NCBI RefSeq assembly: GCF_002113885.1
Contig: NW_018480040.1
Coordinates: 124,001 to 188,000 of the forward strand
Source: Mizuhopecten yessoensis
Taxonomy: Eukaryota
Length of the DNA: 64,000 nucleotides
Direction: 5' to 3'
Below are positions 8,266-57,000 of this stretch, piece after piece. The number at the start of each line of letters is the position of its first letter. Position 1 is the stretch's first letter. The notes below the pieces were generated by a model, which had not been told where the DNA came from, searched no databases, and saw nothing but the letters and a program-made list of their open reading frames with translations. The translations under genes were made by a program, and so were the position numbers.

Positions 8266-11200
8266 GTTGCTATATTATTTTTACACTCAGAAAACTGTTA
8301 TTGATGATATTTTACATTTCCCCCATTTTCTCAGAATTTATTTATTAAAGCTGTAGTTAATATGTTGGTAAAAACCGTTTCAAATGCGTAGTTACATTAT
8401 ATTTCGTTTGTGGTACGAGGATTCTTAATTATGTAAATTCACTTCACGCATACATGTTATTTCAAAACAGTGTGAGCAAAAAGAAGACATGCAGCAAACA
8501 GATAATTGCAATTGACTACGTCAAGAGCAAAAATAGTGTACCATATATGGATATGAACTGGTGAATGAAGCACGTGCTGACCACGTTGTGTTGGATTACT
8601 ATAACGATGGTTTCACGTCATATTACAAAATAACTTTTTTTAATTTACACCCTTGTTCAAGGACGAATACACTTCATTATGTGATGTACGATTCAAACCT
8701 GGTAATCGTCTCGTCTACTACCAAACCAAAAACAATGAAGCACACAAATATGTATCACTCATCTGAGTGCAGATGTATCACCAACATAGTTCAAAAAAAT
8801 GGCAAGAAGCATTATCAAAAATAAATCAAATCTATAATCCTTATAGAAGAAACTACACCAATAGTTCGTTTGACGTCGATATTCAATACAAACTATATCA
8901 TCTTGCAGATTTAAAAAAATGTTAATACTGTTTGAGCGTCGAAATAACACAGAGCTCATTTCACTAGAGGCTATGACGATGGTGGGTTGTAAAAGTGACT
9001 TGCAGTCATACCATTGAGCTGTAAATCATATAAAAATGCATAATGGCAGCATTTGTGTTATAATACACACATTGAAGTTTAAATTTGACCGACAGACAAG
9101 GCTTTTACATGTGTAGGGATTGGACAAAAAGCATCAAGACGGTTGCAATTTTGTCAGCAAATAAAGTCTATCACAGCAATCTCCAGTTATAAGTAATTTC
9201 TTAAGATATTGAATCAGAATAAAGTCTTTAATTGTATGAAAAGTTAGTTTGACACATACATAAACACTTTACACACCTGTGTATAACTAAATAAATAACA
9301 AATTCATTTTCAATTGATGAACAATATTTCAAAAAAAAAGATCAGGTCAATGACTTAAATATATTTTGCTACATCATTATCAGACAAGGATAAATTAAAA
9401 ACCATGCAGTCTCAATATTCAAACGAAAATGAGCCAGAATATCTGCAATAAACATGAAGGCGAAACCTAGCGCTTAAGAAGGAGCGTTTCCTTGACAACA
9501 CATAATGGCGGTCGCAGATTCTATTTCTGTCAAAAAGATGTATTCCTTCCCATCAGGCATTCGACGACGGTCAACGCACAGGATATATCGTGATGAGGGA
9601 AGCGGTTTGGGAAGCTAATATCCTCGTTCGACAAGAATGACGCAGCTCAATGACACTTGATAATATGATAAGCAGTGCAAGACACCATGTATTATTCATG
9701 TTTTATGCACATGTATTCAAACAATCCAGGAAAATGTATATAGTATGCTCTTTAACAAAAAACAAAGCATATGTATGTTCCCGTAGGGAGACCGACATCG
9801 TCACAAGCTTGTACTCTCCTATTAAACAAGGCGAGTGTTTTTGACTTTGATAAAATACCGATTATATTAAAACTAATTTCATTTAGACATTAAAGAAATC
9901 TTTAGTGTAGACCCATTACGTAATATTAGAAATGTTTGAAAAAAATCACATTTAAAAGCAATAATCAAGGTTTTCAATTACAATGTTTGTTAAAAATAAA
10001 AGAGGTGTTTTGAGGATGTGTTTCATAAAAAATAAGTAGTATTTGGTTAGTCTTTACTTGTTGCTAGTTGTATAAGTAGGATTGTGAACACCAGAGGTGG
10101 TGATTAAGTTAGCAACTATCATTTATTTAGTAAACATATGTGAAAGACATCCAAATAAACATTTACTAAATATTTTCCAAAACACGTATAAAACAGCAAT
10201 AGTATACTTTTAGATTATGCCTTGATGATATTATATGAAAATAAAGTAAGCTTCGAGACCATTCCGAGATATGACGGTGTTTCGTCGAGGAACCAAATAA
10301 ATATTGTTTCCTTTGTCTTCTTATTTTTCATGTAATTTGTAGCACTATAGACGATATAATAAAGCTGACCCAAAATACAAGTACATTATTTATAAGTAGG
10401 TCACAGTGGTTTATTCTTATCAGCAATATACTCTACTGTATGTGTTAGATACAGATAAGGACTTTGCACCAAGCATGCCAAATTAAATAAGCATAGCAAA
10501 ACTTAATCTACAGAAATGTCGGAGTGAATTCGGTAGAACACGATTAACACCATCGTTAAGATGTTAGGGGAAGGACAAGTAATAAAAGCTACCCTCATAG
10601 TATCCAAAAGCAAAACGCTAAGAGATGAAGTAGGTTAAAAGCTCTTATTATGTCGGAATTTTTGTGTATTGAAATGTCTTCCATCGGAAGTTATGCCAAG
10701 TATTTGGTATGTATTTGTGGTGTACAAACATATCAATGCAGGTCCATGTGAAAATGTTTCAGTAATCGTGATATAATAAAATAAATACGTGTGTAAATGT
10801 GTATATATAAAGAAGGTAAGATAAGTGAAATCAGGACCTGAAATGCGTATACAAATAATCTGTCATATATATATAAAGACCTCGAACCCCCATTACTAGA
10901 CTGGCCACTAGCCAACATATCCATCATTACCATAACGGAATATCACACTTTTATATGCAACCTTAATTTCCATGATTGATTTTTTCATTGTACATCGTTC
11001 TGAACTTGATCGAAGTATTAAAGGTCAAAATTTAAGGTCTTGACTTATACATACTTGTTATTTCAAAATATATAAGTTATTATTCAGGTTAAATATATGT
11101 TTGTTGGTTATATATCATAAAATCAAATACATGACCATTACATAGCTGTTGTGTGGTTTGTTTTGCCAAATATAATGTCATATCAATATGACGAAGTCTC

Positions 11201-12289
11201 ACCAAATACTTCAACACCGTATTTCCCATTTCCTGTGATAAGTCAAAGATATTTCTAAACACAATTTGGCGCGACTATCGACATGCCCCTTTGAGTATTA
11301 AGGCACAAAATAATGCATATTGTCAAAACAGTACCGCGGATATATACCAGTGTATAGTATTTATCAGATGTGTGCTAGATTTTCTTAAGGTCCGTGTAAT
11401 TGAGCTCTCGCACGCATGCGCTAGCGAGAATTTCTTATAAGTCAAGATTCTGTTAAAGGAAAAGTAGGAAGCATCGTGCAGTGATTATAAAGAATCAGGA
11501 TATGCTCATTGGTGTCGTGTTAAAATTACAGTATTAGCATGATCACTATATTACCGGATTTTATGAAATATTATCTTGCCCTTAAGATATATCAAATTCA
11601 AGAGAAGATTTCATATTACTTTTATAAATCTGTATAGCTAACAATGCTGACTATGGCAACAGAACAGCTGACATTTAACATTAACAGGTGCTGATAAGGT
11701 AGGAGAATTAACCAATATGCATGATGTCTATAAAATCGGTTTTTAACAAGTAATCAACTAACAATACATTGCACAAACTCAGACACATTTGTCAAAAAAT
11801 GCGAGCCAATGTGGCAATCGGCCTCTTGTAATATTCAGATTTAGTGTTGCACAATACATTTCAGACACTAAAATGGTTAACTTATAGTAAAATTGTCAAA
11901 ATAGGGTCATTTGTGATTTTGGTTCCCCACTATCGCCTCTTGTCTTTCATACATGTATCTTAGAATGGGCTTTCCAAACTTACATTGGTCATATCATTAC
12001 GTGTCCCGCATAAGGTCAAGGTAAATTTATACGAAAAATATCTTATCGATGATAGCCACCAGAATGCTATCAATGACATCCCTGCTTAAAATCCTTAGCC
12101 AACACAAATAATACATTGTCAAACAATTATTTTGTCAACACTGAATATATATTTCAGCAAAATGTCAAGAGAAATGGTCACCAGATATGCAAAGTGAGAA
12201 ATTTTTCGCTTAAAAAATATGTAGTCTAACATAAGCCAATAATGCTCCACTTATGGTCATTTTGCACACGGTTCCTCTCTGTCTCCAGT

Positions 12290-12296
12290 TATATAT
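12290..12296 (+). promoter_or_regulatory. TATA box of gene A
   Basis: TATATAT about 50 bp upstream of ATG 12344; conserved in the right-arm copy (~52527-52533). Confidence 0.55.
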
Positions 12297-12343
12297 CGTG
12301 TGTGAATGGACGTGTGTCATTCTTGACATATCACTCCTACACA

Positions 12344-14605
12344 ATGTACTGGTCGTTGGCTGTCGCCGTGTGCCTGATTGGGCAGGTATGTTATTAACGT
12401 ACTCCAACAAAAATATACACAAGGTGCACTATAGATCTTTCATTTGTAACATAGGGTATCATGTTGTCCTTAGTATATTGGATGTGTGCTTTGTTTCTTA
12501 TTTGGCCTTATGTGTTGACAATATTGTTTATACTTGAACTTCGTTTAACTACCTTAATTATCTTTATATATAAAATATATTGTATTTTTTCTTAAAACAT
12601 AATCTGTTTGGATTGGTGTTTATTTCTTTCTAATACATGGAGGAATTGTTATGATTTTCAGCTTAATTCCATATACATTTCACGAGTATGGCAGATCATT
12701 AATATTTCCTGCGAGACAAAAAAACAACATAAGTGAACATTTTGGTATATTCTACTATGCAAGTAATATCTAAAACTCTAGAATGGCGGACTCGTTAGTG
12801 CAACCAAATAGTTTTGGAGATGATAGCTTAATCGTTGGCGCTATATTTTAATGATGTTACGCCTGACAAGAAATCTGCACATTTTAAAAGGTCAACTTGA
12901 AACAATAGTACATGTTTTCTTATATCAGGTGATGTTTTCTTCAAAGAATGGCATCAATAGGTTAGTTAGAAAATATATCCTAGTTGATGTAGCGATGACT
13001 TACCTAAACAGCTATTTACTTTACTGTCGCTTCACATGATGTGTTCAAAAACAGTTCTGGCATCTCAAAGGGATATTTACCACTGACAGATATCACCCTT
13101 GATATCAGTCACAGTGTGAAAGATAACGATTTCATTACGCTGATAGAGTTCAACTTATATATAATTCAATTATCGAACTTATATCTGAAAAAATATAATT
13201 GATCATTAAATGAAGATGTTGTTTGAAATAAAAAAAGAGGTGTACATTTTATACTTCCTTTTTTGTAGCCGCTATTTTTTGTATTCCTTAACTAAATAAG
13301 CACAAAATAGCAAGTAGGTGTTTGCAAATGACAGCAATAGTGATAATTGACTCTTTGAGTGATCGTATATAGTCAAATCAGATTTCATTTTCCTTCAACT
13401 GACAATTGTTTAAATAATGTTAATTGCATCATGTCTGGTTTTAAAAGACACTTGCTGTGCTGTAAAAACAGAATTCATTTGATTGATTTGTGATTTTATT
13501 TTATATACAGATATCTGGATTTACTGTATTTCAAGAAACAGCAACACCATCATTTCTAGATGAACTTACAACACAAGAACCAATGCCACCAACCACCCAG
13601 CGTGTCATCGACGCAAACGAGTTCGACCAGGCTTTGTTTTTGTATGACGCTCCGACGGTATGTACCCGTTAAGAAAAAAAGAAAAAAAATGGTTTTTCTA
13701 CAATTTCGGTCCCTGGTATCACCGATGAGGCCTAGAGGAACGGAACAGCTGTAAAGTACAGTGTAAATCATGTTTAGCATACTTTATATACATGCATTAT
13801 CAAATTTTAAAGGTCCATTGTGTGAATCTTAGGTTCATCGTTTTGATATACACTAACCTGTATACATGAATTTCTTTCTCCATAGCATCAACTGGTTATG
13901 AAGCTTGGGCATTACTGTTACATTCATGGCGTCACGTCATCGTCACAGCAATTAGTACATACAGCAGATGGACTTTTAAAATTCGAAGTAAGTAAAAGTA
14001 CAGCATATACCTTCATCAACTGACAATAGCTTTATCAAACATAGAGTGAAAATGTAATGGCCTGTGTCATTTCATTTTTGTACAAGTCCATGAATGAACA
14101 CTTGCCAGACCCATCATATTGTTTCGCTTGTAATAATATGTTCACTGTTGATCACGTGTAGTGATATTCAACAGTTATGTGACATATGTTTCAATGTACA
14201 AAATACCTATGAACTTTATGGACAAGTCCCTGTGACAACTAAATATCATTTAGTACATACAACATATAAGCCTCAATAAAATAAAATAGTGTTTACACTA
14301 CTTGTAGAATCTGTATATATGGATAAAACTTTTACCAATTGGTGTCTTTCGAATTTCTGTTTGAAGTTTAAGGCCAAAACTGACCTGCTTGTGTCGAGGG
14401 GCGGTTAAGCCTGAACAAAGAAGCTGATTGACTTTTTTATTTCCAGAGTATCTTGATGTACCTCGTAGCCGCTGGTATGCATACCCAGATGACCCATGCA
14501 GATGCTAAGAGGTTAAGCGTGCCCATTGAACACTTTTGCAGAGGACATGACATACAGGTCGTGTCAAGGATTCACCATAGCACTACCAAAAGTACAATTG
14601 TGTGA
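12344..14605 (+). CDS. Gene A: secreted BRICHOS-like protein, 149 aa; exons 12344-12385, 13511-13657, 13886-13987, 14447-14605
   Basis: All introns GT-AG, phase 0. MYWSLAVAVCLIGQ|ISGFTVFQETATPSFLDELTTQEPMPPTTQRVIDANEFDQALFLYDAPT|HQLVMKLGHYCYIHGVTSSSQQLVHTADGLLKFE|SILMYLVAAGMHTQMTHADAKRLSVPIEHFCRGHDIQVVSRIHHSTTKSTIV*. AATAAA overlaps the stop. Exon structure is shared with four paralogues. Confidence 0.9.
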
Positions 14606-15619
14606 ATAAATTAGAAACAGGTTTTTCAAACAAGTATTTCATTATTACTCTTCCTTATTCGGCAAACATATTGGTACATCGAATTGAAGTTGCAAACACA
14701 CAATGAAACATAAAGCATGTTAAAATATTGCACATATTTCAAAAACTTTTCGAATTATAATTATCCTATGGAGTTTGCTATAAGTGTAATTTCGACTCAA
14801 CAAACTATGATCCTGTTAACAAAATGGTTAATCTATTGTTAATATATAGAGCTCTGAAATTAAAAGCATATTGTTTTGTTTAGACATTAAGGGCATATTT
14901 TATTAACAAATATATCACCATTATGAGTAACAAAATATATCGAATTCGTTCGATTAGTAAGGAATTTCTGCAATACCAGGTATGTCCTCGACTAATCGTA
15001 TACTAATACTTTGTTCCCTAGTTTTGGTCACTGTTACAATTCTTGACGGTGTACTTTGATCAAGTTATTTGCAACACGATTAGTCCAATGAGTACCAAAT
15101 CCTTTGCAAAGCATCCCAAGCGTCCAGCATATTTGTCGACAAACTTCTTGTCATTTTCTTTATGTGACCTTTATGTTTTCCATTGGGTTTATTTCAAGAA
15201 TAATATCCCCGTTATCGTTAAATTCTATTTCTACTTGGTTCGAAAATATTTTTGAGTTCAACTTATTATAACAGTATGCAAAAAATTATAGAAAGATAGA
15301 TTCCTTTTAAGTGAACGCTTAACATTCGGAAACCATCCTTAATCGTTTCGAGTAATTCCTTTGGTATCGCAGTTAAAACAACTTCTGAAAAACGTTAGCC
15401 GCTTTTTAACTCGTGTTTACAGATATAAATGTCCGTAGGGTTAAGAAAACATTAATGACACTTTTATTGCTTCTGTTAATATTGGTTTGCCTATTAAATA
15501 ATAATTGTTGTCACCCGATAAATCAATGAAACAAATTAGATAACAGCGCTATCTCTTATTTACAAAAAAAAGAATGCAAGAACAATAAAATAAACTCTTA
15601 TACAAAATAATAAACAACT

Positions 15620-15622
<3 letters not shown>

Positions 15623-15678
<56 letters not shown>

Positions 15679-15686
15679 ACACACAC
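15623..15686. repeat. (AG)n(AC)n microsatellite
   Basis: About 26 AG units; the right-arm equivalent (~48917-48931) has only about 7. Confidence 0.95.
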
Positions 15687-17150
15687 AGAGATAGAGGGAG
15701 AATCGTAAAGAAGAATATCAATTAAAGAAAACTGTTTATAACACGCGAACTGGTTTCATCACATTTTTTTTCAAAACAAAATGTTAGAAATGTACCAATA
15801 AAAAAACCTAATGAAAAGGTCAGTATAAAAGACAGCAATGAGGAGAGAGGAGGTTCCAAAACCGAAGAACATTGCTGAACATACCCAATAAATTTACTTC
15901 ATAAACATTACTGTTCACGTGGCTTTACATTGGAAAAACGTTTTTATTACACCAGGGATAATTATGTTAGTCCCCCGAACAAGCCCAAATTCGAAATTGA
16001 CGCACCTGAAAGAATAATTACACCTTCATACCAAGGTTTGAGCATAATCAGACATAGAGATGGACAAAACGCAACACCTTGATTTTCACTAGCAGATGTG
16101 TTAACAAATCAGAAGCACTAGCGGCCATGTTTGATGATCGATCAAAAATGAAGCACGTCTTACAGAACACGCCCATCATTGTTCACATAACCTTCATAAG
16201 TACCAGGCACGTAGTTTCTAAAGTTAAAAACATCTGCAAAGCGTTTGACGTAAGTAAAATGAGAAAAAGAAATGCATCAAAAGCAAGTTCGTTTGGGGAC
16301 ATAAAAATGGAAAGCCAAAGACATAAAGATATGAATGTCAATAAAACACTGTCTTCTCGGCGTTGTCAGATTCATATCTTGACATTTGCCTACGGTATCG
16401 TAATGGTCCCAGCCTCGTTACCAGTATCTCTGACAAAATTTGACGACCATGACTACCTGAATTTATATTCATAACCAACAAATGATTGCCCTCCTCTGGT
16501 AATAATATTCTATGGCTTATTGATTAGACAAATTACGAAATATGTTCGTGTACAAGTGTGAGTGTAGCGGCGAGCTCCCTAAACAACTCCTAACGGTGTT
16601 ATCATTTTTACACGTATAGACGAACATTGTGAAAACTTCACTTAAATGCGCAATTTTATCAATAACACGATTATAAGTATTACACATTCAGATGACGGGC
16701 GTCTTAAACAAACTTACCATGGGTCACATTCGAGCAAAATTTACATGTAAAGTGAGGAATTTGAAACGAGGCAACGCAGAAACTGGAGCGTTTCTTGATG
16801 AATTCTTGCTGTTCTATAGGCGTAGAAGATATGAGTTTCATGTAATTATCGGGAATGCAAAATTATTGCGTATTCGCCAACCATGTCATGTCTATCTGTC
16901 GACTATCAAGACCTACAACCCTTCATGAAAAAATCATAACTTTGTATTTTGGATCATATATAAGATCACTACTTACTAACTGTCAAGCCGGATAATAGTT
17001 GTAGAGATGTAGAACAAGAACATGATACAGGAGGAGTTGTTCTAAGGGCATCTACATTCAACTGTTTTATTGATAAAAAGATTGAATATTGAAATGTCGA
17101 TATCTGTAACAACGTTTACTTTTCTATTGAAAAGTAAACAAAAACATTAC

Positions 17151-17298
17151 ATACGGATTGAATCTGGATTTTTCCAGTGTCCATGCAATTACGAACGGGC
17201 TAAAATTTACTTACACACCACATGAGCGGCCGTAGCGAAGTAAATTTGTACCCATTCATATTTGCATGAACATTGGAAATCCCAGATTCAATCCCTAT
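17151..17298. mobile_element. ~150-bp hairpin of a Crypton-N-like non-autonomous element
   Basis: ggattgaatctggatttttccagtgtccatgcaa ... ttgcatgaacattggaaatcccagattcaatcc. Confidence 0.6.
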
Positions 17299-18238
17299 AA
17301 TTCCAAATCACTATCAATGGGAAGGAAAACCAAAAACATAATTTAAATTACGAATTGTTTTTCATTCATTCATAAATTTAAAATAGTTTAGTAATATGAC
17401 GTCACATCGCAACGTCATTTCGGCGATCTCGAAACTAACTAACGTGAACAATTTTCCACAGCCGCTTCATCGGGTCGAGCGACCTTGTTGATAAAAACAT
17501 TAGCAGTGGTTTAATTTGCAAATGCACATAGAGAAAGTTAACAACATTGTACGTTGACATCGATGGATACTGGTTCTGGAGGACGGCCCGAAAAGGCCAG
17601 GGTTGACACCCGGTTTGAGGATTTTCTTTATTATGACGGAAAGTGCATTAGCTAGACTCGTCACGTTTTTGTGTCTATTGATCTTTCATGGATAAAAAGT
17701 ATGAGAGAACTCTTATTCGTATGTAATTGAAGGACCATAATGTGTCGTAATTCCAACCCTGGGGTTCGTTTTGTTGTAGTCTCTGCCTTGTTATGTGCGG
17801 CGTAAGTAGGCCTAGGACTTGTGTTTGCATGCTGCGTTCGTCATATTCGTGAACATTCATGGATAATACAGTATGTGTGCAAGCAAATTCACCTCAGTTA
17901 ATACTTTCTAATGTTGGAAACACCCAGATTAATTCCTTATTATCGTCACTAGTTTGATCATTGTGCGGACCCATATGTGACATCGAAATATTGTCAGTTT
18001 GAGCTTTGTCAGATTGATATCGTCTAAGGAGAAATCGGATCACCAAACCATCATTTTATTCATTAATTGAATATTCTGAGGATGAATTATATTCATTTAT
18101 GATTGTATCAAAGGAAGAATACCGATGGGTGTTCTTACAAGCACCAGGGGTTCACGCGAGATATGTATAGAACGCTCTGACATCACCAATCAGCGTTTAC
18201 AGTTTTTGCGAATGTCAGGATCAAGCCTTTTGCAGGTA

Positions 18239-18374
18239 CAAGTATTTTTTATATAAAAACAAGTATTTTTTTGATATAAAAACAAGTATTTTTGACATAA
18301 AAACAAGTATTTTTTATATAAAAACAATTATTTTTTATATAAAAACAAGTATTTTTATATAAAAACAAATATTT
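18239..18374. repeat. ~21-bp minisatellite (caagtattttttatataaaaa) x6
   Basis: Read directly; each unit is itself quasi-palindromic. Confidence 0.9.
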
Positions 18375-21300: not shown

Positions 21301-21445
21301 TTTATTTTGTGTTTCGTAAAATATCCCTTCACAGTGCCTCACAGTCTTATCACCGAATAATATAAAGACGCGAACTCCAAGTTCAGTCCGCGGATTTCAT
21401 TTTAACAGCATTTTCGACAACTCTTCCATTGAAAGGACATCAAGT

Positions 21446-43695: not shown

Positions 43696-44675
43696 TGTTC
43701 GTGTTGTCTGACAGATATCAGTATCTGGATGAACGCCAACATGCTTAAACTTAATCAGGAAAAGACGGAACTAATCGTCTTTTCCCCAAAGTGTCAGCAA
43801 ACAATGGCTCTCCAGCTCAAGGTTGGTGCCAGAATTATTGAGACTGTTCCAGCTGTTAAAAACCTAGGGGTATACTTTGACAGTTCTCTGAACATGGAGA
43901 AACAAGTGAACGCTATTGCCAAATCCTGTTACTACCAGATCAGGAACATCGGCTGTATTCGGCAGTTTCTAACTGCAGATGCATGCAAGATTTTGGTGCA
44001 TTCACTTGTTACCTCTCGGTTGGATTATGGTAACGCCCTGCTCTGTGGTATATCTGACAAACTAACTAGTCGTCTGCAGAGGGTTCAGAACACTGCAGCA
44101 CGGCTAGTTACTCGTACTCGAAAGAGAGAGCACATCACACCTGCGCTTTATTCGTTGCACTGGTTACCTGTACGATACAGGTCGCAGTACAAAATTCTGG
44201 TATACACATACAAGGCACTGAATGGAACAGCTCCTCAGTACCTACAGGAACTTGTTACCCTGTATCAGCCGTCAAGATCACTGCGGTCGGAGTCAGAATC
44301 TTTGTTGTGTGTCCCAAAATCTCGTACTGTGACCTACGGAAACAGATGCTTTGGGAGGGTTTCGGCTACGTTGTGGAATAGCTTACCATCTGCTATTAGG
44401 AAGTCGAATACCCTGGCCAAGTTCAAGAGGGACAAAAAAAGTCACCTCTTCACGTCTGCATTTTAGAATCTTTGCAAAGTCGTCATGTAAATACCACCCT
44501 TTTATTTGTTCAATTATGTGCACATTGCTTGTTAAATGTATGAAAGTGATTGCAAGCCTTTGTTGTTTGTTTTCACAATTATAACCATTACTATATGTTG
44601 TAAAGCGCCTTAGAGTAATTTTACAAATTATATAGGGCGATATATAAATGCTGTATATTATTATTATTATTTATT
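43696..44675 (+). mobile_element. 5'-truncated L2-clade LINE, ORF2 C-terminus intact to stop 44466, with (TAT)n tail
   Basis: LKLNQEKTE, VKNLGVYFDSSL, LVTSRLDYGNALL, LQRVQNTAARLV, LHWLPV, LWNSLP; 3' gtaaagcgcc...atataaat...tattattat; the empty site is seen on the left arm at ~20460-20480. Confidence 0.92.
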
Positions 44676-45549
44676 ATTCGTCTTCTGCCTTAGATTCTAG
44701 ACAGTGTTATTCAGAGATAAGAAAAGACACGAACTGTTACTCTTCCCTTGAACTTTTATCATTGCTGTCTCATAATTGGAACAATGGATGATATTATAAT
44801 TATATACTATTATTTGTTTGAGATCATTGTACAAAATGCACTGAATAAACAAGAAGCATGGGTAAGACTAAGATTTTGATAAAGGGTTGTAGATGACCCT
44901 CCACACGAATTATAATTTCTATAAGACGTTTTCAGTATACAGCAAAGTGTTATGTAGCTGAATGCATTTTTAATAAAACACAAAATACGTTAAAACTAAC
45001 CAAACTTCTCTTCTTTCAGCAAAATCGTGCCATGTTTTTTTTATAAACCTGAAAGCATGTATGTAAAGTGAGTGATATAAGAAAGCCACGAACTTAAATT
45101 TCATAATGGTCAAGTGTCCTTGTAGTAGGTCATGGGAAGGGAAACGTGGTATGTTCTGGTATAATAAAGGGAAAGGCCCTCCCAACAAACATGGCTCAAA
45201 ATGACAATAGTAGTTTATTTTCTGTTTAGGCGTTAAGCCAATAATGTCAGTGTTTTTCTTGTCATTTTTCAATCTTTCTCAGACTTGACAAGCTGCATAA
45301 CCCAACCTGAATACAGAGATATTGTCGCCGTTTTATTTCACTTGCACCTCCTTACTGAAATAATTAAGGACTGTATATCACATTTCAAAAAGAAAATCTT
45401 AAACCACCTTGAAAAATGTTAATCAGATAAACGCAATTTGAAGCAAACCAGACATATGAGTAGAAATATATAACAATTCATATCATTTTTCAGAAATAAA
45501 GTAAAAAGCATATCTGTATTTCATAATAAATGTATCTATTTACAATTGC

Positions 45550-47850
45550 CTTGATTTCCCTCATAGAAAACATACTAACAGCAACTGTGTATACATGCCA
45601 ATAAAATGGGTCGAGAACGTGACCTAGCCGGTGACGTAACAATTGGCGTAGGAATACACGTACACAAGTCAAAGGTCACCCAGGCCCATTCATGTTTACA
45701 AACAAAAACCACGTGTTGGTATCATCGGCCAAACGAGACATCTAAATAATGTTAATAAAGGGTTTTTTATTATTTGTTTTCTAGACTCTAAAGATGATAC
45801 TTATTAAAAACAAAATTTTAAACAAGAAATTAATAACATATGACGAGAAATCTGTGTATTGAGGGTCGTCTGCTTAACTTGGACACCTGCCAGTTTCACA
45901 TGTCGGTAACGCATTGACTGAATGATGGCTGGTGCATTTGGTAATTTCATAGTTTCTCTACCAGGGGAATATAATGTTGTAAAGGACTTGTTAGACTTCG
46001 ATTTTGGAGACGACTTTGACACCTTTTTATCAACACTCCAAGCCTCGGACATGATGCCAATTGTAGGTCCTTAGGTTTTGAATATTGAAGCCATTGGTGG
46101 ACTCCCCCCACCGGAGACTCCTTCCTCCCCAAAACCCATTGGAAAAAATGGCACGGAATCAGGTTCACCGCCATCAAAAAAAAAAGGTTCAAGAAGGTTT
46201 CAGCAGATGCTATGAGGAGATTTGAGGACATGTATCAGTCAGATGCGACAAAGAGAAACATAAAATGGGGCATAATGATTCTTAAAGGTAAACAATAGAC
46301 AGACATGAATCATAAACTAACCGGTAAATATATGAATATACAACTCTTGTAAATGACATGGTGCTATCATACAGTAGATCTACTACACGTCAGATTGAGT
46401 AACACAACACAACACTACCATTGAAATGCAGATAAATTAATACAAAATATCTGTCAAGTCATTGCCATTATTGATTGCGTAATGAATTATCAGTTTGTAA
46501 CCGTTGGTTGTATTTAAATTGTAGATTGGCACAGGGAAGCATATTGCTCCGATGTCAGCATGTTGACCATCACAGCTGACGGGTTGGCCCACAAACTCAC
46601 TAATTTTATTATGAAGCAAAACCAAAAGAGAAACCATCTGATAGTGCTACCAAGCCTTCTGCGAACAATAACGAACATCATACAAACAGTTTAAAAAATA
46701 TACGGGCAGCAATAAATAGACACCTCGAAGATCTAGGTCGAAATATTGACATTGTCAATGATCGGGAGTTTTTAAAAATCATGCAACAAAACCTTAAAGG
46801 AACTTCTGAAAGACCGTATGAGTCGCGGTCAAAACAGCGCAAAGAAATAATTACTCAGAACGATTTCAAGAAAATTGATGCTTACCTTGAAACTGCGAAC
46901 AAATCTCCAATCGGCCTCCGTTTAGCAATTTGGTTTATGACCTCCATTCATTTTTGAGTCGAGGATTGGAATTCCATTTCCAATTAAACATCGATTCATT
47001 TGTCTTCAAACATGACGAGAACGGTGTTGAATGTGCATGTCTGACCAGGCAGAAAAACTGGCAGTGCGGTCTTTACAATAACGAGCCAATGGCCGAAAAA
47101 CGTATGTACTTTACTGGCACATCGTTGTATCCCGTCAGACTGTTGAAAGAATATATCAATAAAACTGATGACAAAGCTACACGTCTGTTCAACACGTGCG
47201 TGAAGGAAGCCTTGAATTCGCCGTTGAACTGAAAAACGTGGTATACTAATAAAGCCCTTGGTAAATCTACCTTCACCAACTTCCTCCCGGACATCTGTAA
47301 ACAGGCAGGCTTTTCAAAAAGCTATACCGCCCACTGTTTACGAGCATCGTTTATCCAACGCATGTCTGATGCGGGCTTCGAAGCAATAACATTTTTGTTC
47401 ATGTAGAGATTGCTCCACTGCCCAGAAACGGTCCATTAGTGCTACACTGACATCCATGAACTCAGGCCTCGACACCTCTGTCTCGGCAATTGACACAAAT
47501 CCTATGCCTGTTGTCGAAAATAATTCGACAGTAACACGTCCAAATTTACCATCATTTCTCTCCTCAAATGTGCAATCGACGTCAGGGATGCTTACAAACT
47601 CGAGTTTTGCAAATTGCACGTTTAACATTAAAATGTAGGCTCGTTTCATGTCCCACCTCGTCGGCGAAGCTGCATCACAGTAAAACTGATATTCTACATC
47701 CGCGTCTTGTTAAGTTTTGTGTGTTTGTACATGTTGCGTAGAAACAATTGGATTTTTTTAATAAAGATATTATTTTAGCACACAAACTGTTACATTTTTT
47801 GGATGCATATTTTTCAAACAATTAAATTAAAGAGTTGCAATAGAAGAACT
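45550..47850 (+). mobile_element. Degenerate Crypton (tyrosine-recombinase transposon)
   Basis: KNIRAAINRHLEDLGRNIDIVNDREF, FLSRGLEFH, WYTNKALGKSTFTNFLPDICKQAGFSKSYTAHCLRAS (H-x-L-R motif); frameshifted; absent from the left arm. Boundaries approximate. Confidence 0.8.
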
Positions 47851-49925
47851 ACTTTGTTTTGTTTCGAAGGGGGAAATGTGGATTAGTATAAACAAAAAGC
47901 ATTGGTGAGTTGAACACGCCATGTAGTGTATAGACTGGACACAATAACAAAACATGAGGCTTGTAGAATACTTATAACTGACAAAAAATACAGCAGTTGG
48001 TGAAACAAAAGAATAATTATGGCACCGAAGGAGTAGTCATCATTCGGTAGTGCACGAGCATGTTTCTTAAATTGTCTATTTAATATAACACAGAGCATTA
48101 TAATCAAAGGAGGGTGATAGTTTGTTCGTGTGTATACATTCAGGTAGTCATGGTCGTCAAATTTGTCAGAGATACTGGTAACGAGGTGGGCACCATTGCG
48201 ATACCGTAGGCAAATGTAAAGATATGAATCTGACAACGCCGAGAAGACAGTGTTTTATTGACATTCATATCTTTATGTCTTTGTCTTTCCATTTTTATAC
48301 CCCGAAACGAACTTGCTTTTGATACGTTTCTTCTTATTATTGTACCTCCGTCAAACGCTTTCTAAATGGGTTTGTTTTTCTTTAGAAAATACGTGCCTGG
48401 TACTTATGAAGGGTATGTGAACAATGATGGGCGTGTCCTGTATAACGTGCTACATTTTCCTGATCGGTCATCAAACATGGCCTCTATTGCTTCTGATTGG
48501 TTAACACATCTATGAGTGAAAAACAAGGTGGTGCGTTTTGTCCATCTCTATGTCTGATTATGCTCAAAACTTAGTATGTAGTTATAATTAATTTCTTTCT
48601 GGCGCTTCAGTTTCAAGTAAAGGCTTGTTCGGGGGACTAACAGAATTGTCCCTGGTGTAATAAAGAAGTGTTTTCAATGTTAAGCCACGTGAACAGTAAT
48701 GTATATGGAGCAAATTTATTGGGTATGTTCAGCAATATTATTCCGTTAAGGAACCTCTGTTCTCATTGCTGTCTTTCATACTGACCTTTTAATTCGGTTT
48801 TTGATTGATACATTGTAAATCTGTTTCATTTTCTAACATTTAGTTTTGAAAACAATGTGATGAAACACTTTCGCTTGTTATAAGCAGCTTTCTTCAATTT
48901 GATATTCTTTTGTCGACTCTCTCTCTCTCTCTTTGTAAATAAGAGATAGCGCTGTTATCTTATTTGATTTATTGATTTATCGGGTGACAACAGTTGTTAT
49001 TTAATAGGCAAACCAATCTTAACAGAAGCAATACAATTTTCATCAATATTTTCGTAACCCTACGAATATTTATATCTGTAAACATCAGTTAAAAACCGGC
49101 TATTGTTTTTCAGAAGTTTTTTACTGGGTGTTGTGGGGGGTAGGTATTTGTTAACTGAGTCCGATACTAAAGGAATTATTCGAAGGATGGTTTCCGAATG
49201 TTTAGCGTTCACTTAAAAGGACTCTATCTTTTTATATAAGTTTCTACATATTGTCATAATAAGATGAACTTAAAAACATTTTAGAATCAAGTAGAAATTA
49301 AATATAACGATAACGGGGATATTATTCCTGACATAAACCCAAAGGAAAACATTAATGTCACATAAAGAAGATGACAAGAATTATGTCGACAAATATGCTG
49401 GACGTTTGGGATGCTTTGCAAAGGAATTAGTACTCACTGGATTAATCGTTTTGCAAATTACTTAGTACACCTACCAGATTTGTAACAGTGACCAAAACTA
49501 GGGAATGCTGCACAAGAAAGTATTAGTATACGATTAGTCGAGGACATACCAGGTATTGGTGAAATTCAATACTAATCGCACGAACTCGATCTATTTTATT
49601 ACTCATACTGATGACATAGTTGTTAATAAAATGTGTCCTTAATGTTTAAACAAAACAATAAGTTATCAATTTTTCATCAGAGCTGTATATATTGACAATA
49701 AATAAACCATATGGCTAACTGGATCCTATTTTGTTGAGTCGAGATTACACTCAAAGCAAACTCCATAGGATAATTATAATCCGTGAAGTGTTTGAAATAT
49801 GTACAATATTTTTACCTGTATTATGTTTCAGTGTGTTTATGTAACTTCAATTCGATTTCCAATATGTTTGCTGAATAAGAGAGTAATAATAAAATACTTC
49901 ATTGAAAAACCTGTTTCTAATTTAT

Positions 49926-52482
49926 TCACACAATTGTACTTTTGGTAGTGCTATGATGAATCCTTTTCAAGACAAGTATGTCATGTCCTGCGCAAAAGTG
50001 TTCAACATCCCTACTTAATGTCTTAGCATCTTCATGGGTCATTTGGGTATGCATGCCAGCGGCTACGAGGTACATCAAGATACTCTGAAAATAAAAAGTC
50101 AGTCAGTTTCTTTTTTCAGGCTTTACCGCCCCTCAACACAAGAATGTCAGTTTTGGCCTTCAACTTCAAACAGAAATTCAAATGACACCAATTGGTAAAT
50201 GTTGTATCAATAGATATATATATTCTACAAGTAGTGTAAACAGTATTTTATATTATAGAGGCTTATATTTTGTATGAACCTAATGATATCTAGTTGTCAC
50301 AGGGACTTGTCCAAAAAGTTCATAGAAATTTTGTACATTGAAACATATGTCACATAACTGTTGAAGATCACTTCCACGTGATCATAATATGGTTAACAGT
50401 GAACATAGTATTACAAGCGAAACAATATGGTGGGTCTGGCAAATGTTCATTTATGGACTTGTACATGACACAGGCCATTACATTTTCACTCTATGTTTGA
50501 TAAAGCTATTGTCAGTTGATGAAGGTATATGCTGTACTTCTACTTACTTCGAATTTTATAAGTCCATCTGCAGTATGTATTAATGGCTGTTGCGATGACG
50601 TGACGCCATGGAGGTAACAGTAATGCCCAAGCTTCATAGCCAGTTGATGCTATGGAAAAAGAAATTCATGTATACAGGTTAGTGTATATCAAAACGATGA
50701 ACCTAAAATTCACACATTGGACTGCTCCTGTACAATTTGATAATGCATGTAGATAAAGTATGCTAAAAACGAATAACACTGTACTTCACAGCTGTTCCGT
50801 CCTTCTAGGACTCACCGGTGATACTAGGGACCGAAATTATAGAAAAACCATTTTTTTTTTTTTTTTAAATGTATCATTTTTTTTTTAAATTTTCTTAACG
50901 GGTACATACCGTCGGAGCGTCATAAAAAAACAAAGCCTGGTCGAACTCGTTTGCATCGTTGACATTATGATGACGAATGGTGGTTGATGGCATTGGTTCT
51001 TGTGTTGTTAGCAGATCTAGAAATGATGGTGTTACTGTTTCTTGCAATACAGTAAATCCAGATATCTGTAAAAAAAAAACACACACACACAAATTACACA
51101 AAAGAATGATTTATTTACCGCACACCAAGTGCTCCCTTTATAAAGGTTGTGGTAATATTCTGGGAGCATATCATATGCAACCACTGTCTCAGCCAAATTT
51201 CATAAGTATTATAAAGTTCTTACTGTATATTGCACGAATAAATAAGTATTTTTTCATTATACACGCATTTAACCAATTAAACCCTAACACAAATCAAGTA
51301 ATACGATAAATATATGTGTCAGATCAGTAAAAATTAAAGCAGGCTTGATTATATAGAAATGGGTCAAGTATTCATAAAAATATCATGGTTGATGTTATTT
51401 GCAAAGACCATTCTATTCATTTTTGTTTACAAAAGAACTTTAACATAACTAGTTTTATTTAATTAGTAAAGAAATTAAAAATGAATATAGGTATTTAAAA
51501 CCCGCGAAAGGTAAGTCATTCAACACTATCTAAACACCTCTTTTTAACCAAAACCAATAAACTATAAAAAAACAAATACTGTTTCATTATCAAAAATAAT
51601 AATTACACATTTAAGGATAAACGTTCGATGATTGATGTTTTTATCCTAGTCATTAGAAAAAATCATCGTAATAAAACCGATATCTTTCTCACTGCTCAAT
51701 ATTCGTTTTTTGGTTTACGCCAATCAAAACTTCTAATCCCCACTGCATCAGAAGCACAGGGTTTTTGAAACACATGTAGGTGAGGCGACTGAGAAATTAT
51801 TAGTTCTGTATGTACGTCTTTGCTTTAAACACCAGTATATTTTTTCTTACTCTAATATTGATCATTTTGCAAAAAAGATTTCACCATATTTTAGAAGAAA
51901 ATTGTATGACTGTTTGTATATAGTAGACTATTTGAAATAGTGAGCAATCTTGTTGTCAGACGTGATCGCATTCTATGAATATAGCGCCAAAGATAAGCTA
52001 TTACTGTATATCTCAAACTGTCTAGATTCACTAAGGAGGTTGTCGTTCTAGAGAGTTTAAAAGATCACGTGTATAGTAGGGTATACCAAAATGTTCACTC
52101 ATGCGATGTACCCACTGGAAATATTGGTAATCTACCATACTCATGAAATGCATATAGTATTAAGCTGATAATAAACAAAATTCCTCTATGTAATAAATAG
52201 AAATAAACACTAAATCCAATAAGATCATATTTAAAACAAAAAACAATACAACTTATTTTAAAAGGTAATTAAGTTTGTTAAACAAAGTTTTAAAATACCA
52301 CGGTGTTAACACATATGGCCCAATTTGAAACAAGCACACATCCAATATACTAAGGACAACATGAGCCCCTATATTACAAATGAAAGATGTAAAGTGCACC
52401 TTGTGTATATTTTCATCGGAGTGCGTTAATAACATACCTGCCCAATCAGGCACACGGCGATAGCTAACGACCAGTTCATCAT
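49926..52482 (-). CDS. Gene A': secreted BRICHOS-like protein, 152-153 aa, inverted duplicate of A; exons 52482-52438, 51065-50910, 50649-50548, 50084-49926
   Basis: (M)MNWSLAIAVCLIGQ|ISGFTVLQETVTPSFLDLLTTQEPMPSTTIRHHNVNDANEFDQALFFYDAPT|HQLAMKLGHYCYLHGVTSSQQPLIHTADGLIKFE|SILMYLVAAGMHTQMTHEDAKTLSRDVEHFCAGHDILVLKRIHHSTTKSTIV*; splice sites intact; AATAAA at the stop. Confidence 0.9.
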
Positions 52483-53469
52483 GTAGAAGTGAAATGTCAA
52501 GAGTGACACAGTTCCATTCACATACGATATATAACTGGAGACAGAGAGGAACCAAAGGGGCGGTCGATACATAACATTCTACGTTATAAGCTTTTAAAAC
52601 TTTTATCTTAACATTCAAATTTTGAAATACAAATTTTATCACCTGATTTTTTAAATGACAAAATCCGTAAAATGTGTAAGATGTTAACATGTTAACATGT
52701 TTACAATGCTCCATACGTCCATTACCTATGACTGCCTGTTGAGTCAAACGAGTGCAAGATGACCAATAATGTTGTCATACATCATGTATCGACTACATAC
52801 TTTGTTTTTTTATGCAAATAATTTATCACTTCGCATTTCTAGTGACGATTCCTACTTGCATACAGCTGAACTATGTATTCAGTTTTGGCAGCGTGACATG
52901 GAATACTTGTTTGACAATGTATTATTCTTTTGTGGCCAAAATTGTTAAGGAAGGGTGCCATTGAAAGCATTCTGGTGGCTTTCATCGATCAGATATATTT
53001 CGTATAAATGTACATTGATCTTATGCGCGTCACGTAATAGTATGATCAAGGTCAACTTGGAAAGACCAGAGGCTCAAGTGGGGGATTAAAATCACAAATG
53101 GCCTCATTTGGACAAAATTATATATTAGTTTATCTTTCTCTGTATCTGTAATATAATGAATTGTGCAACACTGAATATAACAGCAGGCATATTGACACAA
53201 GGGCTCGCACGTTTTGGCGACATCGTGTAAGTTTTTGCAATGCTAAGGAATTAGTTACTATTTACAGACAGAGTTGATAGACCCGATGTTGTTCGGTCAA
53301 CTCCCTTTCCTTATCGGATCAGCACTTGTCACACTGTTGCATAGTCAGCATTGTTAACTTTACGTTAAATATAAAAAATAATATAAGGTCTATGCCCCAC
53401 AAGGTTTTTTCTGGTTTTCACAAATATGTTTTGTTTTTTTTTATTTTTGGTCAGAAATACCTTGAATTC

Positions 53470-54013
53470 AGATTTATTTCTCTTACACTGGACAGATTTA
53501 TCCTTACTTTTACCGGTGTGAGATTTCCTTGTCTCGACCTAGGGTTGAGACAAGCTACACGTGCTCTTTGCACGTTCTCCACAATAAACCCGATGCCACT
53601 GATGTGACCCGGAAGAAGAACTACTTTTATGTGGTCACACACATACACAAGTTCGTCTGCTTATCTTGTCGTGTTTATACTTGACATCAAAGAAGATTGG
53701 ATTGATTTTAAAATGTTTAAAATATGATGCGTGAACCGTCTGACGCATACATATAATACTAATACGCTATCCACGTGTTCCTGTTTACAAACAATATGCT
53801 TCGTCTTACACTTGGACAGGAACAACAGGGTAAGAGAAAAATAATCATTCACCCCTTCGGGAATGAGATAGGGGGATCTCAACCCTCGGGGGGGGGAAGA
53901 TTCTTAAGTTGCCAAACACTCGGCGAAGCCTTGTGTTTGGCAAATTTGGCAAATCTTCCCCCCTCGTGTTGAGATCCCCCTATCTCACCCCCAAGGGGAT
54001 GAAAGATTTTATT
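53470..54013. mobile_element. Right-arm-specific non-autonomous element with a terminal ~170-bp hairpin (53841-54013), Crypton-N-like
   Basis: gagatagggggatctcaac...ggcgaagcc apex...gttgagatccccctatctc; absent from the left arm near 11590. Confidence 0.6.
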
Positions 54014-57000
54014 AATCTTAAAGGCAGGATAACATTTAACAAAATTCGGTACATGCAACATAGTGACCCAACTAATATAGTAATTTAACACGATATTAAA
54101 GAGCATATCCTTATTCTTAATAATCACTGCACGATTCTTGATACTCTTCCTTTAATAGAATACTGAATTATAATATAGTCTCGCTCGCGCGTGCGAGAGC
54201 TCAATAAAACTGACCGTAAGAAAATCTAGCAAACATCTGAAATACTACACTGTGACATTGGTATATATCCGGTTAATTGTGTTAACAATACGCGCTATTT
54301 TGTGCCCTAATAAACAAAGGGACATGTCGATATCCAAATCAAATTGTGTTTTGAAATGCCTTTGACTTATCACAAGAAATGGGAAATACGATGTTGAAGT
54401 AACTAAAGAGACTTACGTCCTATTTGTATGACATTATGACACAGCAGCTATTTTTATGGTCATGTATTTGTCTTTACAAAATAGATTGTACCCGAGTAGT
54501 ATTTTTTTAAATAACAAGTTTGTATAATTCACTAAGTTGAGTTTTGAATTTCAATGCTTTGATCATGTTCAGTACAGTCTACATTCAATAATAAATTATG
54601 GAAAATCAGGTTGCACATAAACGTATTAGATTCTGTTCCAATATTGAACAATGTTTTGGCTAACAAAATGGGTATATACATATAACCACTCCCGAAACAC
54701 ATTTACCATATTTATTGGGGTGGATGTCTTTATATATATGATAATATGTAATTACATATACATTTCCAGTCCTTATTATGCTTTACTTTCCTTCATTAAA
54801 CACTTGGAACAACTTCAGAGGGAAAACATTCTAATACAAGTACCCATAACAACATAATAAGATGTTTAAACCTTCAATTACCCCTAGTGCTTCACTGTTG
54901 GACATTTTCGGGGAAACTTTTATTTCTTGTACACGCCATAACATCTTACTAATAGAGTTAATCTTTTTTTCTCCTAATTCATCCCTTTATTTCTGTAGAT
55001 TAAGCTTTGCTATGCTTATTTAATTTGGCATGCTTGGTGTAAGCTCCTTATCTGTAGCTAAGGACAAAATAAAGTATGTTGTTGATAAGAATAAACTAAT
55101 TTCACTGTGACCTACGCATAAATAATGTACCAGTTTTGGGGATCAGCTTCATTATATCGTCTTAAGTGTTGCACAATGCATCAAAATAATGTAGAAAGAT
55201 CCAGAAAAATTACATATAGTTTTCTCAAAAGGAGGCCATTTTGTTACCCGACTTTATCCTATCATATCTCGGGATGGTCTTCAATGTTACTTTATTTTCA
55301 AATAATATGATCACTGTATCATTCAAAAATATACTATTGATGTATGTATTGCTTCCTTAATCATCACCTTTGGTGAGCACTACTCTGCTTTAAAAAGTTG
55401 AAAATAATAATTGGACAGTATTATCAATATTTTTCTTGTCGAATAATGCATTTAGTTAAGGTAATGTACACATGATTTAGATGTTTTTCTTCATAGTTTT
55501 CGTCAATCTGATAATGTAGATATGTTTACACAAGTCAGATGTATGACGTCAGATTTCAATATTTTGACATAAGCACTGTGAGAACTTTACGTTGCACTTT
55601 ACGTTGTTGATTATAAATAACCGTATACCTCAATCATAATTTACAATATGGCGTTGATTGCGTAACCTCAACATAAATACACCGGATCATTTTTGTCGAT
55701 AGAGAATCTTAGCCGAATCCCTCTTCAAGATGTACTGAACGTTTGTCGTCGCCCTCTGCCTGATTGAATAGGTACACTCTTTTTTAATAGAAACCTAGAC
55801 CAAAGTTACATGTTGTCAAGGAAACGCTCAATTTCCTAAGTACTTGGTTACGTCTTTATTATCATTGGCTCTCTTTCGTTTTGTTTTTGAGTCAGTTTGA
55901 TATCTTATTTTTTCTAGTTCATTAATGATGTTGTTTATCAACTGTATTTAGTCAGTTACCTTATAATTATGTTGCTAGCGATGATTCAGCGTTAACTGAA
56001 TATGCATTTATAACAAGTTTGTTTTCGTTATAGAGAGGTGACGGTATGTGTAGTGTTTATTTCTGTGTTATACTTACGAACTGGAAGTGGTAATGATACA
56101 TTTCACCTGCATAAATTAATCGGAGTTTAATGGCACTCCGAATAGCAAACCATCGTTATTTTCTAATGACTCGATGACTCACACACAGACAAGTTACACA
56201 CATAAACACCAATTACACAACTCTTGGGACGCAAACACACAGAAATGCACACAACTATAATGGCAATCGCCTCTTTTATACGTATGACTATGTACACATG
56301 AATCCTGTGCTTGATGTCTAAAGACCTCCATTTCAAGCGTATGGTTATCAACGTTTAAATTCATCATTCGGTGAGTATTTAATCCTGCATATTGTTTTTC
56401 AAATTTGATAAATATTCACCTTTAGACCTTTGTTTTTATGAGTGTCACTATTGGTAATAATGTGGTTAATTAAAACGATAGGCGGGCGATAACGGTTTAA
56501 TTTTGAACCTGTAAGCCCTACTTTTTTGCTTAAATTAAAATGTACTATGCTTTCTTTATTTAGCCCAACAATTATTAATATTCAAGACATTTTCTCAAAT
56601 CTTCACTACTGGTGTTGGATCATTATCTGCAATTTTATAGGGAAACAACATCTATATAAGAATGAATAAATATTACAATGTTTTTAATCGGAATAAACTT
56701 TACGAATATTGTCATTTTTATAAAAGAAAACAACAAATGGCCTAAATATGAGCTCTGGGGAACGCCAGCTGTACTTTGTCTAAGGGTGCTTTTGTAACTT
56801 TGAAATTTAAGTTTTTGAGATTTATTAATAAACTTCTTTTCAAATCAATAATAAATACTACCTGAGATACAAATCATCTATACAAAATCCGTTTATACCT
56901 AACTCAATCAAAACTTTTCTCTTATGTCAAGAAATACAAATCTATTATCTTTTTATCTAGATGTATACTTATCGTATCATATACTGGAAGAAGTTGGTCG

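What the first reader, a model, noticed from the sequence alone, without database searches (positions are those of the whole stretch)
9170..56090. 47-kb palindrome with reciprocal gene loss: A kept twice, B only on the left, C only on the right
Seen: an A-B-C cassette was duplicated in inverted orientation. B' lost its donor site and exons 2-4. C' lost its promoter and exon 1, an acceptor and a conserved Cys, and gained two stops. A and A' are both intact. Inference: this is complementary degeneration, so both arms are needed to keep the full gene set, which would stabilise an otherwise unstable inverted repeat.
Basis: partly seen in the sequence, partly recalled or inferred. Interest (0 to 1): 0.8.

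Follow-up and report, generated by a model that had tools for sequence, protein, structure and literature searches.

The report
Decayed scallop palindrome, reciprocal gene loss
A Yesso scallop gene cluster holds an old inverted copy of three small secreted-protein genes in which one gene died on each copy and one survived on both, which is the ordinary fate of duplicated genes and needs no special stabilising mechanism.

Summary
Window 9243-32888 and 36923-56077 are colinear inverted arms with K2P 0.07-0.35 and about 82% identity over roughly 10.5 kb aligned. The spacer is 4 kb.

All three genes are four-exon paralogs of a scallop-restricted, divergent BRICHOS family.
- A and A' are intact.
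- B' keeps only exon 1. Its donor is changed from GT to AT, and LINE debris replaces exons 2-4.
- C' has lost its TATA box and exon 1, and its exon-2 acceptor is changed from AG to AT. It also has frame changes in an expanded His-rich repeat, a Cys-to-Tyr change and two TAG stops.

Comparison with Argopecten irradians shows a single-arm state. The right arm keeps the ancestral orientation, so the only working B now sits on the inverted copy.

Reciprocal loss is real, but the stabilisation idea has no support. The arms are too diverged to recombine readily, and two losses fall on opposite arms half the time by chance.

One caveat: 28707-31583 in the left arm is probably redundant assembly, and the spacer join rests on the reference contig alone.

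The scan had already noted the gene cluster on this same stretch (s1-572313), but found no such palindrome on other DNA.

The parts
9243..32888 (.). Left arm, the inverted (derived-orientation) copy carrying A, B and pseudo-C'
   Evidence: Colinear inverted chain to the right arm. Its genes run opposite to the Argopecten order.
36923..56077 (.). Right arm, in the ancestral orientation, carrying C, pseudo-B' and A'
   Evidence: Gene orientation matches Argopecten G2-G3-NRF.
32889..36922 (.). Spacer: a high-copy transposon at 32894-34425, then locus-specific sequence at 34434-36786
   Evidence: One search finds at least 100 genomic copies at 80-90% identity, and one search shows depth in the thousands. 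One search finds long matches for 34434-36463 only on this scaffold.
12344..14605 (+). Gene A, intact. Exons 12344-12385, 13511-13657, 13886-13987, 14447-14605.
   Evidence: Translation equals P0002, XP_021342003.
49926..52482 (-). Gene A', intact. Exons 52482-52438, 51065-50910, 50649-50548, 50084-49926.
   Evidence: Translation equals P0014, XP_021342000. There is one in-frame 9-nt insertion.
21446..25260 (+). Gene B, intact. Exons 21446-21487, 22479-22553, 24830-24928, 25099-25260.
   Evidence: Translation equals P0003, XP_021342006. It is the ortholog of Argopecten G3.
42635..42676 (-). B' remnant: exon 1 only, with its donor changed from GT to AT
   Evidence: alignment. No hits for B exons 2-4 in the right arm.
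40349..41772 (.). Right-arm filler where B' exons 2-4 should lie, holding a LINE reverse-transcriptase fragment
   Evidence: Homology breaks at 22331/41772 and resumes at 26801/40349. RVT_1 hit at 40524-40721.
38124..40152 (-). Gene C, intact. Exons 40152-40102, 39475-39122, 38609-38508, 38249-38124. TATA box near 40197.
   Evidence: Translation equals P0001, XP_021341994.
26951..29089 (+). Pseudogene C'. The promoter and exon 1 are deleted, the exon-2 acceptor reads AT at 27182-27183, and the His-rich repeat (27230-28092) is expanded and frame-shifted. Exon 3 (28622-28723) has Cys changed to Tyr and a TAG. Exon 4 (28964-29086) has a TAG.
   Evidence: The exon-3 and exon-4 lesions are also present in contigs of three other individuals.
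28707..31583 (.). Probably redundant assembly block: near-identical X/Z copies, two single Ns, and Y pieces that are 98% identical to the right-arm C gene
   Evidence: 99.5% direct repeats. In one search, an 1806-bp contig of run X5 joins 28706 directly to 31584.
45541..47873 (.). Transposon insertion found only in the right arm
   Evidence: Full-length copies at 82-84% identity on other scaffolds.
16554..19216 (.). Left-arm-specific segment made mostly of a dispersed repeat
   Evidence: At least 50 copies at 72-82% identity.
59365..62832 (-). Gene D, a further paralog just outside the right arm. It lies head-to-head with E, which sits beyond the window end.
   Evidence: Translation equals P0011.

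Best explanation
This is an old, decaying inverted segmental duplication inside a scallop-specific cluster of small secreted proteins with a divergent BRICHOS domain.

The ancestral order, as in Argopecten, was thioesterase - E - D - (A) - B - (C) - NRF acyltransferase. In the Mizuhopecten lineage a segment of about 19 kb carrying A, B and C was copied in inverted orientation between C and the NRF gene. After that the two copies drifted apart. Transposons inserted into each arm. One copy of B (ancestral arm) and one copy of C (new arm) were disabled by deletions and point lesions. Both copies of A stayed open.

This is ordinary resolution of redundant duplicates, known as reciprocal gene loss. 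Its side effect is that the only working B now lies on the inverted arm.

Shown here: the structure, the lesions, the synteny and the orthology of B. Inferred: the single-event origin, which arm is the copy, and a later arm-to-arm gene conversion over roughly 13.4-22.3 kb.
For: - Colinear inverted homology through non-coding DNA.
- Exon-by-exon comparison of both arms.
- Gene models identical to database proteins P0001-P0003, P0011 and P0014.
- The Argopecten locus has G1(-), G2(+) and G3(+) between a thioesterase and an NRF acyltransferase, with no palindrome. The same flanks are present in Mizuhopecten.
- In the tree, B pairs with G3 at 96/95 and A with A' at 100/100.
- dS between A and A' is 0.14. 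It is 0.77 between D and E, and saturated between the two species.
- The A/A' coding sequences have no frameshift, where about 3.5 are expected from the flanking indel rate (P about 0.03).
- Arm-specific segments are transposons.
- The C' lesions are seen in three other individuals.
Against: - The join across the spacer is shown only by the reference contig (30882-64000, no N). Other individuals' contigs break in the high-copy repeat at 32.9-33.5 kb.
- Copies of the spacer's unique half lie outside the left arm, in an order that a single simple inverted duplication does not produce.
- Only one outgroup was available, so an inversion in Argopecten cannot be excluded.
- Expression of A, A' and B rests on database gene models. 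No reads were laid on them here.
- A/A' dN/dS is 0.70, which is not significantly below 1.
Confidence: 0.8

Rival explanations
1. Selection-stabilised palindrome: complementary loss makes both arms indispensable, and this is why an otherwise unstable inverted repeat persists.
For: Each arm holds one unique intact gene, B on the left and C on the right. A deletion of either arm would therefore remove a gene.
Against: - The arms are 7-35% diverged and interrupted by transposons, so there is little recombination-driven instability to counter.
- From general knowledge, exchange between inverted repeats inverts the spacer and does not delete an arm.
- Opposite-arm losses are expected half the time by chance.
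- The need for B and C is untested.
Confidence: 0.1
2. Assembly artefact: the arms are mis-joined haplotigs or mis-scaffolded paralogous regions, and no real palindrome exists.
For: The left arm's inner 2.9 kb is demonstrably muddled, with two Ns, 99.5% tandem copies and 98% pieces of the right-arm C gene. An independent contig skips this block. Tiny duplicate contigs also exist.
Against: - Divergence of 13-26% and different gene content cannot be allelic.
- A gap-free reference contig (30882-64000) holds left-arm-type sequence (31535-32888), the spacer and the whole right arm.
- The left contig overlaps it by 575 bp at 99.8% identity.
- Run X5 independently links 27914 to 32596.
- The same outside runs hold both arms.
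Confidence: 0.05
3. Multi-step origin: the present layout arose from several rearrangements, such as a tandem duplication followed by inversions between the S copies, or template-switching replication, and not from one inverted duplication. Later arm-to-arm gene conversion then reset part of the divergence.
For: - The S sequence of the spacer has copies at about 80% identity at 3986-5905 (inverted) and at 7101-7411 and 8134-8636 (direct), all outside the left arm.
- Divergence steps sharply from about 0.3 to about 0.1 inside A intron 1.
- A's introns differ by 0.08, against 0.13-0.26 elsewhere.
Against: The arms themselves form one clean colinear chain. Uneven divergence could also come from local constraint or from alignment bias in poorly conserved DNA.
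Confidence: 0.3

Closest known systems
Reciprocal gene loss (divergent resolution) of duplicated genes, as described after whole-genome duplications in yeasts and fishes (from general knowledge; the term appears in PMC5499181)
   Same: Two redundant copies of a multi-gene segment each lose different genes, so the full set is split between the copies.
   Different: Here it happens within one 47-kb local inverted duplication in a single genome. It is not between paralogous chromosomes or populations. Only two genes are involved, and no effect on speciation is implied.
Large sex-chromosome palindromes of primates, such as the human Y P1-P8 (from general knowledge)
   Same: Arms of tens of kb in inverted orientation around a spacer of a few kb, with paired genes. 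There is also a possible trace of arm-to-arm gene conversion.
   Different: Those arms stay above 99.9% identical through ongoing conversion. These arms are 65-93% identical, full of arm-specific transposons, and carry dead genes. The chromosomal setting of this scaffold, including whether it is autosomal, was not determined.
Duplication-degeneration-complementation (DDC) subfunctionalisation
   Same: Degenerative mutations make both duplicates necessary.
   Different: DDC partitions subfunctions within one gene pair. Here whole genes are lost from different pairs. A/A', the only surviving pair, was not tested for partitioned expression.
BRICHOS domain proteins (Pfam PF04089: proSP-C, Bri2, gastrokines; polychaete antimicrobial-peptide precursors such as arenicin, PMC9756803)
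   Same: The predicted fold's best PDB matches are proSP-C BRICHOS chains. BRICHOS is the only Pfam family with a near-full-length match. One Asp and two Cys are invariant.
   Different: Scores stay below Pfam's cut-off. The proteins are short 'solo' domains behind a signal peptide and a His/Thr-rich linker. They have no transmembrane anchor and no Cys-rich C-terminal peptide. The family was found only in two scallop genera.

Membership tests
Large palindrome (inverted segmental duplication with spacer) | Two colinear arms in inverted orientation | tested here: met
   the chain runs from 9243/56077 to 32888/36923.
Large palindrome (inverted segmental duplication with spacer) | Near-identical arms kept so by gene conversion, as in classical sex-chromosome palindromes | tested here: not met
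   K2P is 0.07-0.35 per block. Only a possible past conversion tract is seen, at about 13.4-22.3 kb.
Large palindrome (inverted segmental duplication with spacer) | Physical adjacency of the arms across a spacer | tested here: inconclusive
   The reference contig 30882-64000 is gap-free. Contigs from other individuals stop in the high-copy repeat at 32.9-33.5 kb.
Reciprocal gene loss after duplication | Both copies originally carried both genes | tested here: met
   A B' exon-1 remnant and C' exon 2-4 remnants lie at colinear positions.
Reciprocal gene loss after duplication | The disabled copies lie on opposite duplicates | tested here: met
   B' is dead on the right arm and C' on the left arm.
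Reciprocal gene loss after duplication | The surviving copies are functional | tested here: inconclusive
   They have intact frames and splice sites and match database gene models. Probable RNA runs hold 20-32% of the words of the C region. No reads were laid on A, A', B or C.
DDC subfunctionalisation | Complementary loss of subfunctions within one retained gene pair | not tested
   No arm-specific expression data for A versus A'. Only dN/dS of 0.70 is available.
BRICHOS (PF04089) | Pfam score at or above the gathering cut-off (25 bits) | tested here: not met
   The best score is 24.0 bits (P0005). B scores 14.2, and A and C have no hit. The six-frame genome scan gave no hit in the window.
BRICHOS (PF04089) | BRICHOS fold | tested here: met
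   The model core has pLDDT 84-93. The top six PDB matches are all proSP-C BRICHOS 2YAD chains, with probability 0.87-1.00 and target-normalised TM 0.53-0.62. A BRICHOS trimer (8ox2) ranks seventh.
BRICHOS (PF04089) | Conserved Asp and two Cys (the feature is recalled from general knowledge) | tested here: met
   D43, C57 and C111 are invariant across nine family members.

The most novel reading that the evidence does not exclude
The locus may be an invertebrate palindrome caught between two states. Arm-to-arm gene conversion may once have homogenised about 9 kb, including A exons 2-4 and the B promoter. It then lapsed, and the arms resolved by reciprocal loss. The functional B would thereby have been flipped to the opposite strand relative to Argopecten, which amounts to gene inversion by duplication and loss without any inversion breakpoint.
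Probability: 0.3. Interest if true: 0.45.

Novelty: new member of a known kind. Interest (0 to 1): 0.3.

Why it matters
This is a clean, fully dissected small example of how a local inverted duplication resolves. Each lesion is visible, an outgroup gives the single-copy state, and the result is a strand flip of a working gene. It is useful as a teaching case and for annotating the scallop genome: C is misnamed 'homeobox protein 2-like', and B' and C' are pseudogenes. It does not change what is known about how duplicates evolve. The gene family itself, a set of scallop-only solo BRICHOS proteins with His-rich linkers, is probably the more interesting subject, and the scan has already noted it separately.

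Tried and rejected
- A six-frame scan of the genome with Pfam BRICHOS found nothing in the window, because the domain is split over three short exons.
- Rfam found nothing.
- The word-based protein search with the C domain found only C itself.
- An alignment of exon pieces to the C domain (A1) was misaligned by MAFFT, with exon 4 placed on the exon-3 Cys. It was discarded, and an exon-4-only profile (A2) was used instead.
- A profile search of PDB sequences gave nothing. Only the fold search worked.
- Reads were laid on the muddled centre (27500-33499). It resolved the redundancy but could not bridge the spacer, because of a high-copy repeat. The probable RNA run laid there was uninformative. 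No reads were therefore laid on A, A', B, C or B'.
- No Pecten or Chlamys relatives appeared in the protein searches, so only one outgroup was available.
- I rejected independent gene-by-gene duplication, because the non-coding DNA is colinear.
- I rejected haplotigs, because the divergence is far too high.
Where a whole protein was needed I used database proteins identical to my models.
- The Ns at 29233 and 30881 were left as they are.
Full report
**Setting.** The window is G000:C76713:124001-188000 of a 988-Mb, 82,659-contig assembly. Database proteins identical to my gene models are labelled Mizuhopecten yessoensis, so this is the Yesso scallop. GC content is about 34% throughout. The only Ns are single letters at 29233 and 30881, and I left them untouched.

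**Is the palindrome there?** Yes.
- The repeat finder and self-BLAST give a colinear series of inverted matches.
- A sensitive chained BLAST runs from 9243/56077 to 32888/36923.
- About 10.5 kb aligns at 82% identity without gaps.
- The rest of the arms is arm-specific, and where I checked it is transposon sequence:
  - a 2.3-kb element at 45541-47873, with full-length copies elsewhere;
  - a dispersed repeat inside 16554-19216;
  - a reverse-transcriptase fragment at 40524-40721.
- The spacer is 32889-36922. Its first 1.5 kb is a high-copy transposon (depth in the thousands).

**The genes.** Reading both arms gave three genes with one plan. Each has four exons with all boundaries between codons. 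Exon 1 is a 14-17-residue signal peptide, a variable linker follows, and a domain of about 90 residues is split over exons 2-4.
- My models equal database proteins residue for residue:
  - A = P0002 (149 aa);
  - B = P0003 (125 aa);
  - C = P0001 (210 aa, named 'homeobox protein 2-like' only because of its His/Asn repeat);
  - A' = P0014 (153 aa).
- The domain is a divergent BRICHOS:
  - BRICHOS is the only Pfam family that matches over nearly its full length, but below the cut-off (best 24.0 bits against 25);
  - an AlphaFold model with core pLDDT 84-93 has proSP-C BRICHOS chains as its six best PDB matches, and a BRICHOS trimer as the seventh;
  - one Asp and two Cys are invariant.
- A full HMMER pass over 1.84 billion representatives found only six clusters, all from Mizuhopecten or Argopecten.
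- More paralogs lie next door. D is at 62832-59365 (-). E lies just past the window end (+). F is on another scaffold.

**The lesions.**
- A' has all splice sites, one in-frame 9-nt insertion and the same stop codon.
- B' keeps a 90%-identical exon 1, but the donor reads AT instead of GT.
- Homology then stops 148 bp before where B' exon 2 should be, and resumes 1.5 kb past the position of the B stop. LINE debris lies in between.
- tblastn finds no B exon 2-4 anywhere in the right arm.
- C' lacks about 550 bp, including the TATA box, exon 1 and most of intron 1, and its exon-2 acceptor reads AT instead of AG.
- The His-rich repeat of C' is expanded from about 350 to about 890 bp, and the His-rich reading hops between frames. 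The frame set by the old acceptor ends at 27902-27904.
- C' exon 3 has Tyr in place of the first conserved Cys, plus a TAG. C' exon 4 has another TAG.
- Contigs from three other individuals, from three studies, cover C' exons 3 and 4 and show no difference at these positions. The lesions are therefore not private to the reference animal.

**Assembly caveat.** Positions 28658-32878 hold three 99.5-99.8% copies of one stretch. They also hold two pieces that are 98% identical to the right-arm C gene in direct orientation, and both Ns.
- An 1806-bp contig from an unrelated 2025 run joins 28706 straight to 31584.
- A 700-bp contig from another run follows the C-like piece to 31541 and then departs.
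- I therefore take 28707-31583 to be redundant assembly, or at most a polymorphism. The true left arm is then about 2.9 kb shorter.
- The C' exon-3 and exon-4 lesions are in the first copy and in the copy that the bridging contig supports, so the conclusion about C' stands.

**Which arm is the copy?** Argopecten irradians has three family genes between a thioesterase gene and an NRF-domain acyltransferase gene. Their order is G1(-), G2(+), G3(+), and there is no palindrome and no A or C.
- The same flanking genes bracket the Mizuhopecten cluster.
- The tree pairs B with G3 (96/95), D with G2 and, weakly, E with G1. A and A' are sisters (100/100). C sits on a long branch with F.
- In the shared orientation the right-arm genes run like G2 and G3.
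- So the right arm is ancestral in orientation and the left arm is the inverted copy. The working B now lies on the copy, and the dead B' lies in the old place.
- This rests on one outgroup.

**Age and divergence.**
- dS between A and A' is 0.14. It is 0.77 between D and E, and saturated between the species. The duplication is therefore far younger than the split of the two genera.
- Divergence is uneven along the arms:
  - K2P is 0.20-0.35 from 9.4 to 13.0 kb;
  - it drops sharply inside A intron 1 to 0.07-0.23 (mean about 0.13) up to 22.3 kb;
  - it is 0.22-0.25 around C';
  - it is 0.07-0.08 at the innermost end.
- A's introns 2 and 3 differ by only 8%.
- A past arm-to-arm conversion tract is the simplest reading, but it is an inference.

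**Is A kept by selection?**
- A/A' dN/dS is 0.70, against 0.15-0.38 for other pairs in the family. It is not significantly below 1 (Fisher P = 0.26).
- The coding sequences carry no frameshift, where the flanking indel rate predicts about 3.5 (P about 0.03).
- Both copies are probably still under some constraint, but it is relaxed.

**The interpretation.** Reciprocal loss is shown. The step from there to 'stabilises an otherwise unstable inverted repeat' is not supported.
- The arms are too diverged and too interrupted to recombine readily.
- Exchange between inverted arms would flip the spacer, not remove an arm.
- Two independent losses fall on opposite arms half the time.
- Nothing here calls for more than neutral resolution of redundancy.

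**Unexplained.** The non-transposon half of the spacer (34434-36786) has copies at about 80% identity just outside the left arm. The copy at 3986-5905 is inverted, and those at 7101-7411 and 8134-8636 are direct. One simple inverted duplication does not give that order, so the history had more than one step.

**Limits.**
- No reads were laid on A, A', B, C or B'.
- The join across the spacer rests on the reference contig.

Noticed in passing
window 59365-62832 (-) and L002 642-4064 (+), which is window 64642-68064: D and E form a head-to-head inverted gene pair with starts 1.8 kb apart. Argopecten has the matching pair G1(-)/G2(+). That inverted pair therefore predates the split of the two genera (dS between D and E is 0.77). 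Inverted duplication has happened at least twice in this cluster.
   Followed up: partly
window 38124-40152 (-): The RefSeq name 'homeobox protein 2-like' for gene C (XP_021341994) is a misnomer caused by its NGTHGNHS-type His/Asn repeat. The protein is a signal peptide, a His-rich repeat and a BRICHOS-like domain.
   Followed up: yes
window 28658-32878: This is a patchwork of 99.5% tandem copies, two single Ns, and 98% pieces of the right-arm C gene joined at the 7-bp motif ATCATGA. An independent 1806-bp contig skips 28707-31583. This bears on the scan's separate note about a 7.3-kb head-to-tail unit at the centre.
   Followed up: partly
window 3986-8636 and 34434-36786: A locus-specific sequence is present three times: in the spacer and twice outside the left arm. 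It includes a local inverted pair at 5431-6371 / 7687-8636. Its origin and its role in the rearrangement are unexplained.
   Followed up: partly
window 38124-40152 and scaffold C76557 (L005 4330-6170): Gene C groups with the unlinked paralog F and its Argopecten ortholog, not with its neighbours A and B. The branch is long and the placement unsure. C may have come from an F-like gene that moved into the cluster.
   Followed up: partly
window 52253-52482 (-): RefSeq isoform X2 of A' (P0012) starts at an alternative exon (MLLTHSDENIHK) and lacks the signal peptide. The same stretch is conserved in the left arm.
   Followed up: no
about 8.5-29.5 kb beyond the window end (scaffold C76713:196.4-217.5 kb): At least five thioesterase-like paralog hits lie in a row. 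The Argopecten locus read here shows one such gene next to the cluster.
   Followed up: no
window 2310-3077: A tandem array with 31-bp and 92-bp periods (about 20 copies, 77-80% matches) lies between the NRF gene and the left arm.
   Followed up: no
window 45541-47873: A 2.3-kb dispersed element inserted in the right arm carries open frames, one with a weak sub-threshold HPF1-like Pfam hit. Its type was not identified.
   Followed up: no
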